A stretch of 64,000 nt of DNA from Vitrella brassicaformis CCMP3155 (GCA_001179505.1 CDMY01000462.1:7852-71851); one strand, 5' to 3'; shown: positions 37,406-44,623, counted from the first letter of the stretch. A program made the numbers and translations. The notes: generated from the letters alone by a model not told the origin.

Positions 37406-38450
37406 TCAGTCAGGTTCTTGCTCCTTCTTGTCTTCGTGCTCGAGGCGGTCGATGATATAGTCGACGACCCTCTGGGCGCCCTTGCCCCCCTCCTCGGTCA
37501 GCAAAATGTCGTCTTGCATGGTCCTGACAAACTTGTCTGTCGCTCGGTCGTAGTACCAGAAGCTCCATCTACCGCCGGCAACAGTCGCACACTGCTTGAT
37601 GTCGTGCACGCGCATGAGCCACTTGAGGTCGGCCGTCACCTTCTTGCACCCGTCAGTGAAGTGGACAGCGGCAAACAGCGTCCCGTCGAGCTTGTAGTTC
37701 CTGACGGGCACACAGACACATACACACGTGAAGCCTCTCTGAGAAGGCGCGTTACTTGCTTACCCTTCGCTGTCGGTTATGAGGGCCGTATTGAGGCCAT
37801 CCTTCTCGATGAGGTACAAGCCATACTCATCAGCGATTCCAGTTTCGAGATCGACGTCGCGTTTGTCATCTGGTCCGTCAGCACACCACACGACGACACG
37901 CCAGTCGGTCTGACGAACCAACTCGTGCATCTGCACCAACGAAGGAATGACGGTCAGCTGAGCACACTGTCTGTCTGCATCACGCGATCTGCCCACCTAC
38001 CAAGGGGTGGACGTAGTACATAGAGTGAGTGGCTGTCCATTGCCGAAACCTCAATCTGCCCCTCGTGTCAGCCACACGCACCCCAACCGCACCACACACG
38101 ACAGACAAACCAGTGTCAATCAATAGCCTAGGGAGTGCCCCTCTGTGTGTGTTACTTACTTGGATTGGATTCCCGATGCCCCCCTCGGGTGTGCGGCATC
38201 GCAAAAGAACTGACACAGATCGGCCGGCACCACCACCTTCGGCAGCGGCTTCTGGCGGTTCGCCATCACCGCCTGCGACTTCGTTGGCGGAAGTGCAGAA
38301 GACACTGAAGCCTCGACATGAGGAAGGTGTGGCGCCTGCTGAAACGAGGACATTCACGTGTACACACATGCACACGCACAAAACTGTGCATCCGTGGTCT
38401 ATGAATCCGTCAGTTGCCATCAACGGCCGCACCTGGTTGTCTGAGTCCAT
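37406..38450 (-). CDS. Hypothetical protein (5 exons)
   Basis: Exons join in frame: MDSDNQ|QAPH...IQSK|LRFRQWTATHSMYYVHPL|LTVIP...TDSEG|NYKLDG...KEQEPD*. Canonical GT-AG sites. No family recognised. Confidence 0.7.
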
Positions 38451-38874
38451 CGAAGTGGCCTTCTGTTCACGCCTGATGGCAGATCTGACATGCCGATGAT
38501 GCGGTCTGCCGCTGCTGATGGGCGGTGCTGCAGGGATGAAGGAAGAGGCTTGCACAGGACATTTCTGGAGCACACAGGCCAACCACACCAGTCCAGCACA
38601 AACATCACGAAGGGAGAGCATCCTGTTGCTTGCTTCTCCTTTTCATGCCACGGTCGAATATCCCCTCACTTGGACCGTTTCACACGCCGCCCTGAACCTC
38701 GAGCTCGCAAAACTTTCTTCCGCATTGCAATTGCTGGTCCATTGCAGAGCTCATTGCCTGCATTGCTTCAGGCAAGCTGGGGGAAAGAAAACGACACTCT
38801 TGCTGCCGTCATTTCGGTGACGCTCGTGTGTTTATCCCTCCGTGTGTATGCGCAGGAGTTGGCGGCGGCCCGCC

Positions 38875-41800
38875 ATGCAGTCGGTAGACGTGCCGACGGA
38901 TGTCCACAAGATTCTGGAGGAGCGAAAGTGCAGACACGCCATAAGACAAATCCTCTCAACTGAAGTGGAAAAGGTCATTGAAAGAAAGGGCCCACTCTGA
39001 TGCACCTGGCATTCCTTTGTCGTTTCATGCCGTGTCTGTGTGCCTGTGCATTGCAGATGAAGAGTGAGCTGTTCGCCTCCCATCGTAAGCTGCGTCAGAT
39101 GCGCGAGGAGCGCATAATCTTGGCTGACACCATCACGGGCGGCGGGCGGGTGTCCAAGAATAGCGACCTCTACAAACGCATCCGAGACGCAGTGGTGCAC
39201 GGCACCATCCACAGGGCATTGGAAGTAAGCCAGACGATACATGAAAGAAAGAAGGGCATTTGGATGGATGGATGGATGGATGGATGGATGTGGGCATGCG
39301 TCGTTGTCGTTATCATTGGTGTGTTGTTTGTATGCAGCCTCGGTGGATCCGCGATAGCCTTCACCCGGTCAAGTTTGCGTGCCCGCCTTTCGATAGGTGC
39401 GCACAATGAAACGACACACAGGGACACCAAATGCATTGACGTGCCGTTGTTGTGTCAGTTGCTGCGGCGTGTTTTGGAAGGCCGATGCGGAGTCCTATGT
39501 CGCGACCAAGAACCGCATCATCCTGGGCGAGTACACCGGCCTGGTGTGCCCCAAACCATCCAACATGACCCTCATCGCACGCACCACCACCGAGACACTC
39601 ATACCGACACACCTGGACGAACAAGAGGTGGTCAGTCCCTTATAATGATGCCAAAGCAATCTGATCCGCTTCCACCTTTTTTGTCTATCGGTGGTTTGTC
39701 AGGATGAGGGCGAGGTTGAGCTCGAGTGCGAGCCTGATGCCCGCTTCCCCGCCCCCGCCGACGAGTCCGTTGCAGACAAGGACAACGGCGACGACAATGC
39801 CAGCTCGGCGCTTGATCAGGAGTCCAGTATCGAGGAGTGGAGTGAGGGGGGCGCCAACACCGACCACAGGAAGCCGCGCTCTCAGATCGGCTCGGTGAGG
39901 GGAGGCGCGTCGGCGTCGGCGTCTGGGCGGGCGGCGAACGGGAAAAATGGCAGTGCCGATCCAGCTGTCGCTCTTCACGAGGCCGAGAGGCAGAGACAGG
40001 TATGCATGGATCATGCAGGTCATGCTTGTGGTCCCACCTGTCTGTCTGTCGGTCTGTCTGTCTGTCGTTCAGAGGAAGAACATGTATATTTTCAACCTTG
40101 ACTTCCACCGGAAGGCCTACAAGGACGAGAGGAAACGGTCGCTCTACCCCACCACACACGGGTAAATGGCACGAACAACACGAGTGGGCTCGTTGAAGTA
40201 CCTCTGTCTGTGTGTGTCTGGCGTTTTCGTTGGCCGCTTTAGTTCGTTGCCGCTCCGCAACATAGTTGTAGACGCATCGGAGCGCCTCAAGTGAGCACAC
40301 AGCCCAGCAAAATGAAATCGGAAGACGACAGAGAGATGTTTGTGTGTGTGTGTGCCTGTGTATCTGCGCACAATTGTCAGCGAGATGGCGTTGGTCAACC
40401 ACTTTTCGTGCATCCAGCTGGTGAGCCACCTGCCCAAGGCAAGGAACGCGAAGGCCAATGCAGAGTGGCACCAGGTTAGCCTTCAATGCGTTCACAGAAC
40501 GACAGCCCACAGTCACACATCGAAAGCAAGCATCGATTGCTTGTTCGGTAGGTGTTGGTCGACGGCTGGCCCCACATCATTCTCACGACCGTTCCAGGCA
40601 CACCGATCAACCCAAATGTGAGTGCGGCGTACGGGGACATGGCTGCATGGCTCTCTGGTTGGTGTGTACCCCTCTTCTTTGGTTTCCTAGGATGAGATCT
40701 TGGCTGACTTTGGCGGCGATTGGTTCAAGAACGTCATCAGGTACCACCGACATACACAGCAGCCATCCATCCACTCATGCATGCGCACCCCATATTCGTC
40801 TTTGTGTGAAGGCTGGCGAGCCAGTTTCTGTACCGCGAGCTGACATTCTACCGCAGCGTGGCGTTCAAGCAGTTCAATCGCGACTGGCTGAGGAGCCAGA
40901 TCGACCACATCGCCGCAGAGGCCGCCGTCAAAGTCGAGTGAGTCAGCACACGTTCACACCCATGCCTGTTGTTATCCCTCTGTCTGTTCTGTCTCTTTCT
41001 GTGTGTGTGTGTGGTTGCGCTGCAGCGAGACGGACAAGGACATATGTTGTGAGATGGATGACCCTTGCGCCATCTGCCTCAATAGCAACGCAAACGGCCA
41101 GCGGGTAAGCAACCCACCACACAGAGGAAACAATTTTGTTCTCCCGTTCTCATGAGTCGTTTTATTTCACTGTGCATATACTTGTCAGAATTTGGCGGTC
41201 GTGTGCGACGGCTGCAATCGCTGCTATCACCTGAGGTGCTTGGGCGTCGATCCGCGGCAGCCAGTGCCAAAGGAGGAGTGGTTCTGCGACACGTGCTGCC
41301 TGCACGCCGAGTGAGTGAGCATAGCATAGCATAGCAACCAACACACGCATGGACGAATGCATTTTCTCCCATATGCAGGCGCGTGACGTCCACCTTGCTG
41401 CAGCTGAGGGATGACGCCCGTCTGCACTACATGAACGCCAAGCACATCGACCGGCTAGCCGCCATGCCCGAGCCGGAGGGCGTCCCGTCGCAGCAGGACG
41501 TCCGCAGGAGCACCCGCAGTTGGCAGGGCCTCTACTTCAACCACACCAACCACGACAGCAAGGACCTCGAGCCGCCCAGCCACTACAAAGCCGACCTGAT
41601 GGCTGCCAAGGGACCTCTCAAGTACACACACAGAGAGAAGAGATGGCCCACAGCCCCCACTCCACCATCACGTGTACCTCTGTGTGTCTGTCAGTCGGAG
41701 GAACTTCATGTCGTCAAATCGGGCGTGTGTGCCGGGCCCCCCACCGTCCGACGGCGACCAGCCAGCAGCACCACCGACCCGCAACACTGGCGGCGACACA

Positions 41801-44245
41801 TCGAGAAGCGAGGCTGACGGGGGGTCCTCATGCACATCGCCCGCCACTAGCGAGGCGCATGATTTCCTGCTGTCGATGTACAACATAACGTGCGGCGACA
41901 GCAGGATATTCCATTCCTTCGATGACCCCCTCACCAACAAACCCAGAGAATACCTGGTTACGCGCCATTGAGACATTGAGACACGACTCTATGCGTGTGT
42001 GGTGGATGCAGGGCATCGTAGAGTCGGGGGAGTTCACTCGCAAGGGCACTCTGGTGAATGTGTACTACCCTGAGGACGGCGAGCGACACACACACATTTT
42101 CGAAAAGGCACGTATACACGAATGGACACAAAGACACAGAGAGACACACATATGCGCAGCAACATGATTTCTGTGTGCTTTCTGGGTGCGTGTATGCGTG
42201 CAGGAGTTGTGTCTGGAGCTGGCGAAGCATCGGAGGAATCGCATTGGACGTGAGACCAGCGACAACTGAAACAACCACCCATTACACGTGTGTGTGTGCG
42301 TGCGTGCAGGCACCAGGAATTCCGTGTCATGGTGGAAGCCGTAAGCACCGCACACCACCCACGCCCATCTACTGGCCATCTTGACTAACAGATGTGTGTG
42401 TTCGTTCCCATGTATGTGTGCAGGCGTCGTGTGATGTGTGAGTGCCCTGGCTGCTTCAAGTGGATCGAGTCGCGCGACATGCACAAGGCCATCTTCTGCA
42501 GCAGATGCCCTGCTGCATTCCACAGGCAATGCTGCACCGGTACGCATACGCGAAATGCACTCCGCCCCTTCCACCCAACACACACCTCCCTCCCTCCCTC
42601 TCTCTCACTCCTGGATGTGTGCAGATGCGCCTGCCGCTGACGCCCCACCGTCCCAGTCATGGACATGCCCGTCATGCGCCAGGTCCGATCCACCCTGCCC
42701 TTCCCCCTGCCCCCCTCCCCCTCCCCCTCCCCAGCCACTCGTCCCCGCCAGCCCGTCGGTCGTTTGTGACGAGCCAGGCAGGCCACCCGACTCGCCAGCT
42801 GGCGCTATGCGTGGTGGTGGGCGCAACATGGAGGCCGCCAGGGGCGAGGGGCAGCCTGCTGCTGCTGCTGCTGCTGCTGCGGATAGCGATGGGGATAGGG
42901 AGGCAACCGCTGCAGCAGAAGACCTGGACGCGGTCGAGCTGCCGAGCGATATCGAGCTAGCCGGTGAGATGATACCCGCATGCGCATTTGATGCATGGAG
43001 ACGGTGGGTGCGTTGTGTTCCCCCTCTCTGGGTGCAGCGTCATTCCTCCTGGGTCGTCCCGAGGTGTTGCCTCTGACGGCTGAGCAGGCCACCCGTCTGC
43101 CGCCCGCCACACAAGACGCCGCCCTGCCATATCTGCTCGAGTGGAGGGGCGCTGGCAAGGGATTTGTCGTGATCACTTTCCCCCACGGCGACACCTCCAT
43201 CCGCAACCCCCCCAAGACCTCATTCCCCTCCCGTGGCCGTATCGGCAGCCTCGAGCAGCTGAGGGCGGCGTTTCGCGAGGCGGTGCACTTCCATAGGAGA
43301 CACAATGACGAGTACATCCGGTGAGGGATCGCATATGAGAACCAGGCGGTGGTTTGTGTGCATTGAGCCAGTGTTGGAATGCAGCAAGCCCACGTTGCTG
43401 CCCGCAAAGTTGCGTGAGGACAGGGACAAGGACGAGGGCCACCGAATCATCACACAGCACGGTATATGGGACCAACCAGCCAGTGTATCTGACACACAAA
43501 TCCTCACCCTTTGTGTTGGTGTTGTTCTTTCTGGCCTGCATATACAGCTTCCGAGCTGCTGCAGTCGTTTGCCGCGCCCACCAATGGCAGAGTCGCCCTC
43601 AAAAAAGACCCCAAATCAAGAAAACCAGAGTCAGCGATTGATCCTTCCACTCCCTTGCTCACCTCACAGATATGTCCGTATTCGATCTCTCGTCGGTTTG
43701 TGTGCCGTGCATGCAGGTTCCATGTGCGTGTGCCCGACGAGGTGGTCAATGTGATCGGCCCCCCCGCCAACTCACTCCCCAACCCCCTCATCGATCGCAA
43801 ACGACAACGACCCTCAGTCGCACCACAGCCGGCCGCAACAGCCGACAAGGACAACAAGCCCACCAGCAGCAGACGGGACGAGAGGACATTCAAATTCGAC
43901 ATGCCCGAGCGGCACCCCACCCCGGCAGACGTGCAGGACATGTCTCGGCGATGCGAGCGGTACTGCGAGGCGGTCGAGTCCGCTCGTGGGCGTCTCGAGG
44001 CCATTGCGGCGCAGCGTGAGTGGGAGAGGAGACGGCAGGAGGCCAGAGAGAGGGGCGAGAGCCCGGGGCGGCCTGTGCGGATGGGCGGTGAGGAGGGATC
44101 TGATGTGGAAGAAGGGGAGGAGGAGAGCGAAGAGGAGGAAGACCGGGGATTCGACAATGACAGGCTGCAGCCGGTCGCCAAGGCTCGACGGACCGAGCAG
44201 CCACCAACTGCTTTGCAGCAGACTGCAGCCGTGGCCATAGCATGA
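38875..44245 (+). CDS. SET-domain protein with PHD, Tudor-like, second PHD and a possible AP2-like domain
   Basis: SET motifs: GVFWK...ILGEYTGLV; IVVDASERL|NEMALVNHF; VLVDGWPHIILTT; DEILADFGGDWF. PHD1: CAIC...CDGCNRCYHLRC...WFCDTC. Tudor-like: YL|GIVES...VNVYYPEDG. PHD2: CPGC...CSRCPAAFHRQC...WTCPSC. AP2-like segment at 43125-43305. The start codon is tentative. Confidence 0.88.
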
Positions 44246-44623
44246 CAGACTGACGTATCCAAGGCTTCTTTTGTCCCCTCTCTCTCTCTCTCTCTGTATC
44301 GCATTGGCTGGGAATTGTTGGGCCGCTAATGCGGTCCTGTAGAGATGCTTGTCGCCTTTGCGACTGCTGCTGTATAGCATCTATGTATAGCGGGGGGAAA
44401 AGGGAAACAGGTTGACGCATCCATGTGTGTGGATGAATTCGTGATGGCTCTGGCCCTTGGCAGACTCTGCCAAGGTCCGATGATCCGTGTTTCGTGTGCA
44501 AACCGAGCAATTGACCATCTATACCAACGTCTCCAAGATTGTCCACATGCCATCATGCATCCATACAGGCAGACGCTCACACACGCTCACAGCCATTCAT
44601 TCCCACAGAAAGTGTCGTGTCCC

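What the first reader, a model, noticed from the sequence alone, without database searches (positions are those of the whole stretch)
39460..43305. Chromatin writer/reader protein with a possible AP2-like DNA-binding domain
The order is SET, PHD, Tudor-like, PHD, then LLEWRGAGKGFVVITFPHG...KTSFPSRG...LRAAFREAVHFHRR. That last segment fits the three-strand-plus-helix pattern of ApiAP2 domains, which end in A...A..FR. A lysine methyltransferase fold with three readers and a sequence-specific DNA-binding module would target histone marks directly to DNA motifs. I do not recall this architecture being described.
Basis: partly seen in the sequence, partly recalled or inferred. Interest (0 to 1): 0.75.

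Follow-up and report, generated by a model that had tools for sequence, protein, structure and literature searches.

The report
Alga's SET10-type chromatin gene, AP2 unproven
This is a real, expressed gene of the alga Vitrella that matches the malaria parasite's chromatin protein SET10; the end piece proposed as a DNA-binding domain has the right predicted shape but is not shown to be one.

Summary
It has 24 exons (window 38848-44245) and is identical to database protein CEM14976.1 of Vitrella brassicaformis (1199 aa).

**What it is.** It is the chromerid ortholog of the apicomplexan SET10 family, with relatives in Plasmodium, Toxoplasma, Besnoitia and Cryptosporidium. The order is a very divergent SET-like domain, a PHD finger, a Tudor-like domain, a second PHD finger, then a basic module of about 65 residues. 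So the SET-PHD core is already described.

- The "stop" after EYIR is a GT splice donor, and 228 more residues follow.
- Pfam finds no SET domain here or in any ortholog.

**The AP2 reading is open.**
- Against: no Pfam AP2 hit at E up to 10, and no relative among 1.84 billion proteins.
- The Cryptosporidium ortholog carries three similar modules, one with a weak Pfam AP2 hit (E 0.017).

The scan also noted a "SET-like plus AP2-like" gene on another piece of this genome (s1-233331); nobody has followed it up.

The parts
38848..44245 (+). Whole coding region: 24 exons, 1199 codons plus stop. Identical to CEM14976.1 / A0A0G4FN22 of Vitrella brassicaformis.
   Evidence: Spliced exons translate exactly to P0001. 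Fifteen GT-AG introns are seen as joints in transcript contigs. Protein identity and source.
38848..39630 (+). Exons 1-4, residues 1-175: conserved N-terminal region and the N-half of the SET-like domain, including the invariant GEYTGxV motif (39526-39546).
   Evidence: Aligns with the Cryptosporidium ortholog from residue 19. Invariant columns across 9 orthologs. A PDB profile search of this half finds no SET domain.
39703..39999 (+). Exon 5, residues 176-274: acidic low-complexity insert (pI 4.4) that splits the SET-like domain.
   Evidence: Transcript contig covers 39702-39999. Composition. The insert is variable or absent in orthologs.
40073..40857 (+). Exons 6-11, residues 275-405: C-half of the SET-like domain. 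It carries NEMxLxNH (40289-40402, split by an intron), DGWPHIxLT, and ADFG (40703-40714), with Phe where SET enzymes have the catalytic Tyr.
   Evidence: The profile of 8 orthologs hits only SET8/KMT5A chains in the PDB, E 0.009-0.067; the next hit is unrelated at E 0.92. Invariant residues. No Pfam SET hit.
41066..41296 (+). PHD finger 1, residues 446-494 (exons 12-13).
   Evidence: Pfam PF00628, E 6.4e-13. The exon alone gives E 1.3e-8.
41461..41725 (+). Residues 527-590: a possible further hairpin module between PHD1 and the Tudor-like region. Weak lead only.
   Evidence: BLAST aligns 510-563 with Cryptosporidium module 1, E 0.087. No Pfam hit.
41861..42227 (+). Tudor-like region, residues 636-707 (exons 15-17). 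Includes the GC-AG intron 42108-42203.
   Evidence: Collinear alignment with the orthologs' PTM/DIR17-like Tudor domain, with 5 invariant columns. That Pfam family is found in orthologs (Cryptosporidium E 7e-10) but not in this protein. hhalign gives only E 0.16.
42437..42683 (+). PHD finger 2, residues 730-783 (exons 19-20).
   Evidence: PDB phmmer hits PHF12, UHRF1, CHD4 and AIRE PHD fingers at E 1e-4 to 2e-3. Pfam PHDvar_NSD E 2.6e-4 on the exon.
42690..43039 (+). Pro-rich and Ala-rich acidic linker, residues 786-877. It contains the CCCTCC tract (42664-42758) at which both the RNA and DNA contigs break.
   Evidence: The reading frame is open across the whole of exon 20.
43121..43312 (+). 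It is the most basic segment of the protein (pI 10.5) and is predicted as three strands plus a long helix.
43321..43384 (+). Intron 21 (GTGAGG...ATGCAG, 64 nt).
   Evidence: Joint 43319/43384 in runs X5 and X1. Splice sites checked.
43385..44245 (+). Exons 22-24, residues 971-1199: C-terminal tail with basic and acidic stretches and no recognised domain. Stop at 44243-44245.
   Evidence: Transcript contig record 14 of run X5. No Pfam family. Matches P0001.

Best explanation
**Identity.** The locus is the Vitrella brassicaformis ortholog of the SET10 family, so far described as apicomplexan-specific. PfSET10 is the studied member.

**What the protein contains:**
- A very divergent, insert-split SET-like domain. 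The NH motif is kept, but the catalytic tyrosine position is Phe in every family member.
- A PHD finger directly after the SET-like domain.
- A PTM/DIR17-type Tudor-like domain.
- A second PHD finger.
- After a Pro/Ala-rich linker, a basic module of about 65 residues predicted as a three-stranded sheet packed on a helix.

**Most likely way of working.** It is a chromatin-bound reader and scaffold, and possibly a weak or atypical lysine methyltransferase. It would dock on histone tails through its PHD and Tudor modules. The basic C-terminal module would add a nucleic-acid contact.

**The C-terminal module.** Its predicted fold resembles the AP2/integrase arm-binding class, and I put about 45% on that reading. 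Membership in the AP2 family and sequence-specific DNA binding are not shown.

**Shown here:** the gene structure, its expression, the orthology and both PHD fingers.

**Inferred:** the SET fold, the Tudor fold, the AP2-like fold and every activity.
For: **Gene and transcript**
- Fifteen GT-AG joints appear in spliced contigs.
- The exon model translates exactly to P0001.

**Orthology**
- Cryptosporidium protein P0002: E 8.5e-20, with 44% identity over the motif block.
- Plasmodium 'H3 lysine-4 specific' methyltransferases, the Toxoplasma 'histone lysine methyltransferase, SET' and a Besnoitia protein: E 1e-34 to 1e-46 (source names).
- Invariant motifs across all of them.
- The literature describes PfSET10 as conserved in apicomplexans, with a divergent SET domain that HMMs missed plus a PHD finger. 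The recombinant SET-PHD protein was inactive (PMC11580404; PMC11580448).

**SET-like fold**
- The C-half profile hits only SET8/KMT5A chains, E 0.009-0.067. The alignment pairs the NH motif and the EELxYDYG motif.

**PHD fingers:**

**Tudor-like domain**
- Orthologs carry PF21743.
- The Vitrella region aligns collinearly with it.

**C-terminal module**
- The model gives the three-strand-plus-helix topology.
- AP2 and integrase arm-domain folds are among the closest solved or predicted structures.
- It is the most basic part of the protein.
- A profile of the Cryptosporidium modules picks exactly its first hairpin as the best match in 700 residues.
Against: **SET-like domain**
- No Pfam SET hit in this protein or in any ortholog.
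- The N-half profile finds no SET domain in the PDB.
- The SET8 match is only borderline (E about 0.01).
- The Phe at the catalytic Tyr position, together with published doubts about PfSET10 activity, means 'writer' may be wrong.

**Tudor-like region**
- It is not statistically supported on its own (hhalign E 0.16).

**AP2-like module**
- No AP2 profile hit at E up to 10.
- No relative among 1.84e9 representative proteins.
- Foldseek finds nothing at E below 1.
- hhalign to the Cryptosporidium modules gives E 0.67.
- The model's alignment had only 4 rows, and one of them has the weak AP2 hit. That row could have steered the prediction.
Confidence: 0.72

Rival explanations
1. The C-terminal module is a true, very divergent AP2 (ApiAP2-type) DNA-binding domain. 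The protein would then be a chromatin enzyme or reader that targets itself to specific DNA motifs.
For: - Three-strand-plus-helix model with core pLDDT 71-74.
- Three integrase clusters among the 10 listed (one per family set) of the 30 nearest ESM-Atlas models, TM 0.50-0.53.
- pI 10.5.
- The Cryptosporidium ortholog has three modules with the shared pattern P-x-x-[ILV]-x-W-x6-[FW]-x-[VI]. The last one gets Pfam AP2 at E 0.017.
- Earlier scan notes report many Pfam-invisible AP2-fold modules in this genome. Those notes are unchecked leads.
Against: - No Pfam AP2 signal for the Vitrella module, even at E 10.
- No PDB sequence or profile hit to any AP2 chain.
- Only the protein itself in the exhaustive search.
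- All structural scores are within background.
- The Cryptosporidium AP2 hit is below Pfam's cut-off (15.9 against 33.3 bits). It sits next to a clearly spurious, better-scoring Adeno_E4 hit on the same stretch.
- The link from the Vitrella module to the Cryptosporidium modules is not significant (BLAST E at least 0.13; hhalign E 0.67).
Confidence: 0.45
2. The module is a lineage-specific small basic alpha/beta domain unrelated to AP2. It could be, for example, a protein- or RNA-binding adaptor. A three-strand-plus-helix arrangement is simply a very common small fold.
For: - Foldseek finds nothing at E below 1.
- The segment has no sequence relatives at all.
- ESM-Atlas feature scores are 0.77 or lower.
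Against: - AP2 and integrase arm-domain folds recur in three independent lists.
- Similar modules sit in the same relative position in the Cryptosporidium ortholog.
Confidence: 0.33
3. The module is a second, degenerate Tudor/SH3-like barrel, that is, another histone reader rather than a DNA binder.
For: - The profile of the orthologs' Tudor domains finds its best local match in residues 500-1199 at 915-933. It pairs GFVVITFPHGDTS with the FxIEYeDGDxE strand-turn (hhalign E 0.11 and 0.03).
- The single-sequence model also had an extra strand upstream.
Against: - Only 17-19 columns align.
- The collinear, full-length Tudor counterpart is at 636-707.
- No Tudor, SH3 or chromo fold appears in the structural hit lists.
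- The long C-terminal helix fits AP2-like topology better.
Confidence: 0.1
4. The SET-like domain is a pseudo-enzyme. The whole family would then be a reader and scaffold that recruits other enzymes, not a 'writer'.
For: - Phe replaces the catalytic Tyr of the ELxxDY motif in all 9 family members.
- The first glycine-rich motif is degenerate.
- No Pfam SET match.
- The recombinant PfSET10 SET-PHD protein was inactive, and the activity of immunopurified protein may come from co-purifying enzymes (PMC11580404).
Against: - Very strong conservation of the NH motif and the surrounding pocket motifs across chromerids and apicomplexans argues for a retained ligand-binding site.
- Loss of PfSET10 is reported to reduce H3K18 methylation (PMC11580448).
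Confidence: 0.4

Closest known systems
Plasmodium falciparum SET10 (PF3D7_1221000) and its apicomplexan orthologs (Plasmodium 'H3 lysine-4 specific' methyltransferases, the Toxoplasma 'histone lysine methyltransferase, SET', the Besnoitia protein, and the Cryptosporidium 'N-terminal apicomplexan-specific globular domain plus PHD' protein)
   Same: - Same divergent SET-like domain, with invariant GEYTGxV, NEMxLxNH, DGWPHIxLT and ExxADFGxxWF motifs.
- A PHD finger directly after it.
- A PTM/DIR17-type Tudor further downstream.
   Different: - The Vitrella protein is shorter (1199 aa) and lacks the Plasmodium DUF7073 region.
- It has a second PHD finger after the Tudor-like region.
- It carries a basic three-strand-plus-helix module and a 228-residue tail after the Tudor-like region. 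The Plasmodium and Toxoplasma proteins end soon after the Tudor.
- The family had been called apicomplexan-specific. This member is from a free-living chromerid.
AP2/ERF and ApiAP2 DNA-binding domains (Pfam PF00847), and the related arm-type DNA-binding domains of tyrosine integrases
   Same: - Predicted three-stranded sheet followed by a helix, about 60 residues, strongly basic.
- PfSIP2 AP2 and two integrase arm-type domains are among the nearest solved folds.
   Different: - No sequence-profile match.
- The conserved Trp of the second strand is Phe.
- There is a 10-residue loop between strands 2 and 3, and a longer helix.
- Structural scores are not above background.
- DNA binding is untested.
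SET8/KMT5A (H4K20 monomethyltransferase), the closest solved SET domain
   Same: The C-half aligns over the NH motif, the following strands and the EELxYDYG motif.
   Different: - E is only about 0.01.
- The N-half is not detected.
- The catalytic Tyr is Phe and the Phe/Tyr-switch position is Ala.
- A 99-residue acidic insert splits the domain.
Plasmodium SET10 in proximity-labelling contact with separate ApiAP2 proteins (PMC11580448)
   Same: It links a SET10-type protein with AP2-type DNA binders in one functional unit.
   Different: In Plasmodium the AP2 proteins are separate polypeptides found by TurboID labelling. Here the possible AP2-like module would be part of the same chain, which is unproven.

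Membership tests
AP2 / ApiAP2 DNA-binding domain (PF00847) | Significant match to the AP2 sequence profile (Pfam gathering score 33.3 bits) | tested here: not met
   No AP2 hit at E up to 10 for the ORF piece, the exon or P0001:895-975, and none at E up to 1 for P0001:840-1010 or the whole protein.
AP2 / ApiAP2 DNA-binding domain (PF00847) | Three-stranded antiparallel sheet packed against a C-terminal helix | tested here: inconclusive
   The AlphaFold2 model has this order of elements (strands 16-20, 27-31, 44-47; helix 56-78). Mean pLDDT is only 64, from a 4-row alignment. The single-sequence model had pLDDT 52.
AP2 / ApiAP2 DNA-binding domain (PF00847) | Structural similarity to solved AP2 domains that stands above unrelated folds | tested here: inconclusive
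AP2 / ApiAP2 DNA-binding domain (PF00847) | Sequence relatives that are recognised AP2 domains | tested here: not met
   Only the protein itself among 1.84e9 representatives. Word search and metagenome scan were blank. The one indirect link is Cryptosporidium module 3, with Pfam AP2 at E 0.017. Its relation to the Vitrella module is not significant.
AP2 / ApiAP2 DNA-binding domain (PF00847) | Sequence-specific binding to double-stranded DNA | not testable with these tools
   Needs a protein-binding microarray, gel shift or DAP-seq.
SET-domain lysine methyltransferase (PF00856) | Match to the SET profile | tested here: not met
   No Pfam SET hit in P0001 at E up to 1, or in five orthologs at E up to 0.1.
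SET-domain lysine methyltransferase (PF00856) | Similarity of the C-terminal half (NH motif to ELxxDY motif) to solved SET domains | tested here: met
   The profile of 8 orthologs gives 14 top hits, all SET8/KMT5A, at E 0.009-0.067. The next hit is unrelated at E 0.92. The motifs align in register. This is borderline significance.
SET-domain lysine methyltransferase (PF00856) | Similarity of the N-terminal half (glycine-rich cofactor motif) to solved SET domains | tested here: not met
   The profile of the N-half finds no SET chain at E up to 10.
SET-domain lysine methyltransferase (PF00856) | Catalytic Tyr in the ELxxDY motif | tested here: not met
   ADFG, with Phe, is invariant in all 9 family members and aligns to the DYG of SET8.
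SET-domain lysine methyltransferase (PF00856) | Methyl transfer to lysine | not testable with these tools
   Published data on PfSET10 conflict: the recombinant domain was inactive, the immunopurified protein was active, and H3K18 methylation falls when PfSET10 is absent.
Apicomplexan SET10 family | Shared divergent N-terminal/SET-like domain with the family motifs | tested here: met
   E 8.5e-20 to Cryptosporidium and 1e-34 to 1e-46 to Plasmodium, Toxoplasma and Besnoitia. There are 46 invariant columns.
Apicomplexan SET10 family | PHD finger immediately after the SET-like domain | tested here: met
   PHD at 446-494, about 40 residues after the SET-like domain, as in all orthologs.
Apicomplexan SET10 family | PTM/DIR17-type Tudor domain downstream | tested here: inconclusive
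   PF21743 is found in orthologs but not in P0001. The collinear alignment has 5 invariant columns. hhalign E 0.16.
Apicomplexan SET10 family | The Plasmodium hits are the orthologs of PfSET10 itself | not tested
   Inferred from their product name ('H3 lysine-4 specific') and from the central divergent SET plus PHD layout described for PfSET10. PfSET10 (2329 aa) lay outside the length window of the search.
PHD finger (PF00628) | Cys4-His-Cys3 zinc-finger profile match | tested here: met
   PHD1 E 6.4e-13. PHD2 matches solved PHD fingers at E 1e-4 to 2e-3.

The most novel reading that the evidence does not exclude
The ancestral SET10-type chromatin protein of apicomplexans and chromerids carried its own AP2-type DNA-binding modules. 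These would be retained in the early-branching Cryptosporidium (three modules) and in free-living Vitrella (one or two). They would have been lost in Plasmodium and Toxoplasma, where SET10 instead meets separate ApiAP2 proteins. The fusion would then be a 'Rosetta stone' showing that SET10 is aimed at DNA motifs by AP2 domains.
Probability: 0.3. Interest if true: 0.7.

Novelty: new variant of a known kind. Interest (0 to 1): 0.45.

Why it matters
**PfSET10's mode of action is unsettled.** PfSET10 has been a debated malaria drug target. Its real activity and its way of finding target genes are unresolved, and ChIP attempts failed (PMC11580404).

**What this result adds:**
- The family is older than the parasites, because it is present in a free-living photosynthetic relative.
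- All members share Phe at the catalytic tyrosine position. This sharpens the question of whether these proteins are enzymes at all.

**If the C-terminal modules are AP2-type DNA binders.** If the modules of the Vitrella and Cryptosporidium orthologs prove to be AP2-type DNA binders, they would give a direct, testable explanation of how SET10-type proteins are recruited to DNA. They would also fit the proximity-labelling link between PfSET10 and 14 ApiAP2 factors.

**If they are not.** The locus is then an ordinary ortholog with lineage-specific additions.

Tried and rejected
**Readings I rejected**
1. TGA at 43321 as the stop codon. Two runs splice out 43321-43384, and P0001 continues past it.
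2. The frame-0 ORF 41889-42164 as one Tudor exon. Exon 15 ends at 41956 in another frame. The GT donor at 42112 gives a frame clash. Depth arithmetic pointed to a GC donor at 42108, which P0001 confirmed.
3. My own first reading 'ALEVSQ' at 39216-39233. It ran into the intron; the exon ends at 39224.
4. An MBD (methyl-CpG-binding) reading of the module, considered because SETDB1 combines Tudor, MBD and a split SET. There is no Pfam MBD hit and no MBD in any structural list.

**Searches that led nowhere**
5. Single-sequence AlphaFold model (pLDDT 52) and its Foldseek search: uninformative.
6. ESM-Atlas feature searches: scores 0.77 or lower.
7. Word search with the exon, and two metagenome scans: blank.
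8. Profile of the four AP2-like modules against the PDB: no AP2 chain.
9. Paralogs of the module in the 64-kb window: none.
10. Bacterial promoter/terminator scan at the 3' end: irrelevant for this eukaryote.
11. Literature searches for a SET-AP2 or SET10-AP2 combination: nothing found.

**How the spliced model was handled**
Exons were searched by reference.
- Whole-protein searches used the database protein P0001 that one search returned.
- A local script joined the exons only to check that they reproduce P0001.

Full report
**Source and gene structure**

The window has about 58% G+C and many short introns. Earlier scan notes named the genome as the chromerid alga Vitrella brassicaformis. I confirmed this later from the protein's own record.

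Run X5 holds spliced transcript contigs:
- Record 13 (2404 nt) covers exons from about 38870 to about 42684.
- Record 14 (1485 nt) covers 42742-42962, 43037-43319, 43384-43460, 43547-43629 and 43717 to beyond 44400.

Fifteen GT-AG introns appear as joints. Run X1 confirms four of them.

The two records abut inside a CCCTCC low-complexity tract (42664-42758). The DNA contigs of run X4 break there too. The tract lies inside one open exon (42625-42963). I therefore read this as an assembly break, not as two genes.

The remaining introns I worked out from reading frame, splice-site scores and contig lengths. One needed depth arithmetic. The depth in bins 41896-42076, 42077-42257 and 42620-42800 fits only an exon 42012-42107 with a GC donor. 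That also solves a frame clash which every GT donor left.

**Sequence searches with the module**

The exhaustive search with the 93-residue exon translation found one protein among 1.84 billion representatives. That protein is P0001, CEM14976.1 / A0A0G4FN22, 1199 aa, named only 'PHD-type domain-containing protein'. Joining my 24 exons in a local script reproduces P0001 exactly.

I sent no joined model of my own to any search tool. Exons were searched by reference, and whole-protein searches used P0001.

**Check of the observation**

- The gene begins at 38848.
- The TGA after EYIR lies in the donor of intron 43321-43384, so the 'last segment' is followed by 228 more residues, to the stop at 44243-44245.

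**What the domains are**

On the whole protein, Pfam finds only PHD1 (446-494, E 6.4e-13) and a weak variant-PHD signal at 732-764. PHD2 is confirmed by matches to solved PHD fingers of PHF12, UHRF1, CHD4 and AIRE, at E 1e-4 to 2e-3.

No SET, Tudor or AP2 family is reported. PDB phmmer with residues 90-445 finds nothing.

The word search with residues 90-445 found a Cryptosporidium protein, P0002 (1455 aa), annotated 'N-terminal apicomplexan-specific globular domain plus PHD domain'. It scores E 8.5e-20.

A profile of P0001 and P0002 then found further relatives at E 1e-34 to 1e-46:
- Plasmodium proteins of 1820-1997 aa, several of them named 'histone-lysine N-methyltransferase, H3 lysine-4 specific'.
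- The Toxoplasma 'histone lysine methyltransferase, SET' (1635 aa).
- A Besnoitia protein.

The product name, and the layout of a divergent SET directly followed by a PHD, are those of PfSET10. Two 2024 papers describe PfSET10 as:
- conserved in apicomplexans;
- carrying a SET domain so atypical that an HMM survey missed it;
- inactive as a recombinant SET-PHD protein;
- of disputed function (PMC11580404; PMC11580448).

That the Plasmodium hits are PfSET10's own orthologs is my inference. PfSET10 itself (2329 aa) lay outside the search's length window.

**The SET-like domain**

None of the orthologs has a Pfam SET hit either. The nine proteins share 46 invariant columns, including GEYTGxV, NEMxLxNH, DGWPHIxLT and ExxADFGxxWF.

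A profile of the C-terminal half hits only SET8/KMT5A chains in the PDB. There are 14 such hits, at E 0.009-0.067, and the next hit is unrelated at E 0.92. The alignment puts the family's NH on SET8's NH and ADFG on SET8's YDYG. The N-terminal half is not detected.

I conclude that the domain is a divergent SET fold. The support is borderline statistically but coherent. The whole family has Phe where SET enzymes have the catalytic Tyr. Whether it 'writes' is open.

**The Tudor-like region**

The orthologs carry a PTM/DIR17-type Tudor domain (PF21743): Cryptosporidium E 7e-10, the others 8e-5 to 2e-3. Vitrella residues 634-712 align with it end to end, with one 6-residue insert and five invariant columns. 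On its own this is not significant (hhalign E 0.16).

**The proposed AP2 module (residues 905-968, window 43121-43312)**

*Sequence tests are negative:*
- Pfam gives nothing at E up to 10.
- PDB phmmer gives nothing.
- ESM-Atlas features give nothing useful.
- The word search, two metagenome scans and the exhaustive search give no relative.

*The Cryptosporidium ortholog gave a lead.* After its Tudor it has three stretches (1040-1100, 1160-1220, 1380-1442) that share with the Vitrella module the pattern P-x-x-[ILV]-x-W-x6-[FW]-x-[VI], followed by a helix. The last stretch gets Pfam AP2 at E 0.017, 15.9 bits, below the 33.3-bit cut-off. A clearly spurious Adeno_E4 hit scores better on the same stretch.

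A profile of the three Cryptosporidium modules picks exactly the first hairpin of the Vitrella module as its best match in residues 500-1199, but at E 0.67. BLAST is not significant either. Plasmodium and Toxoplasma proteins end soon after the Tudor and have no such modules.

*Structure prediction:*
- The single-sequence model was poor (pLDDT 52).
- With the three Cryptosporidium modules as extra alignment rows, the model reached pLDDT 64, core 71-74. It has strands 16-20, 27-31 and 44-47 and helix 56-78.

*Structure searches with that model:*
- Foldseek found nothing at E below 1.
- The ESM-Atlas shape search listed three tyrosine-integrase clusters among ten rows, TM 0.50-0.53.

AP2 and integrase arm-binding domains are regarded as one fold class (Balaji et al. 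2005, cited in PMC4501334), so the recurrence is coherent. Every one of these scores is nonetheless at the level the tools call background. The alignment that produced the model may also have carried the bias.

The module is the most basic part of the protein (pI 10.5), as is Cryptosporidium module 3 (pI 9.8). Cryptosporidium modules 1 and 2 are acidic.

A rival local match exists. The orthologs' Tudor profile aligns its strand-turn FxIEYeDGDxE with GFVVITFPHGDTS (E 0.03-0.11). This covers only 17-19 columns, and no barrel fold appears in the structural lists.

**Verdict**

- The locus is a new, chromerid member of the SET10 family with verified extras: a second PHD finger and a long C-terminal extension.
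- The AP2 reading of the basic module is plausible, at about 45%, but unproven. Family membership fails the sequence tests and is inconclusive on fold.
- I found no paper describing a SET10-AP2 or SET-AP2 combination.
- The survey of C. parvum SET proteins does not list the Cryptosporidium ortholog, and the C. parvum ApiAP2 paper mentions neither a PHD finger nor a methyltransferase.
- The scan's notes list another 'SET-like plus AP2-like' gene elsewhere in this genome (s1-233331). It has not been followed up and I did not examine it.

Noticed in passing
window 42108-42203: A GC-AG intron (donor AAG|GCACGT) lies in a gene whose other 22 introns are GT-AG. I inferred it from contig depth, and the annotated protein confirms it.
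   Followed up: yes
window 41461-41725 (P0001 residues 527-590): A stretch between PHD1 and the Tudor-like region reads PEGV...SWQGLYF. BLAST aligns it with the first AP2-like module of the Cryptosporidium ortholog (E 0.087). It could be a second, more degenerate module of the same kind.
   Followed up: partly
P0002 (Cryptosporidium, KAH8739331.1) residues 1040-1100, 1160-1220, 1380-1442: Three modules with an AP2-like pattern follow the Tudor domain of the Cryptosporidium SET10-like protein. The last has a weak Pfam AP2 hit (E 0.017). The protein is annotated neither as SET nor as AP2, and the published C. parvum list of 10 SET proteins has no entry of its size and domain make-up.
   Followed up: partly
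window 40703-40714 (P0001 A378-G381) and the aligned columns of P0002-P0009: The whole SET10 family has ADFG where SET enzymes have the catalytic (Y/F)DYG. Phe replaces the catalytic Tyr in all nine members examined. This bears on the published dispute over PfSET10 activity.
   Followed up: partly
window 42664-42758: A CCCTCC-rich tract encodes a proline run. Both the DNA contigs (run X4) and the transcript contigs (run X5) break there, which could be misread as a gene boundary.
   Followed up: yes
window 41318-41336, 42288-42306, 44267-44297: Short simple repeats, (CATAG)n, (GT/GC)n and (CT)n, produce false long-range joints and loose ends in all four runs laid on the region.
   Followed up: partly
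window 37406-37711, minus strand: A 101-codon ORF with a protein-like sequence lies just upstream on the opposite strand. It is probably an exon of the neighbouring gene. I did not examine it.
   Followed up: no
window 44246-44400 and beyond: Transcript contig record 14 runs at least 270 nt past the stop codon. This is either a long 3' untranslated region or an overlap with the next transcript.
   Followed up: no
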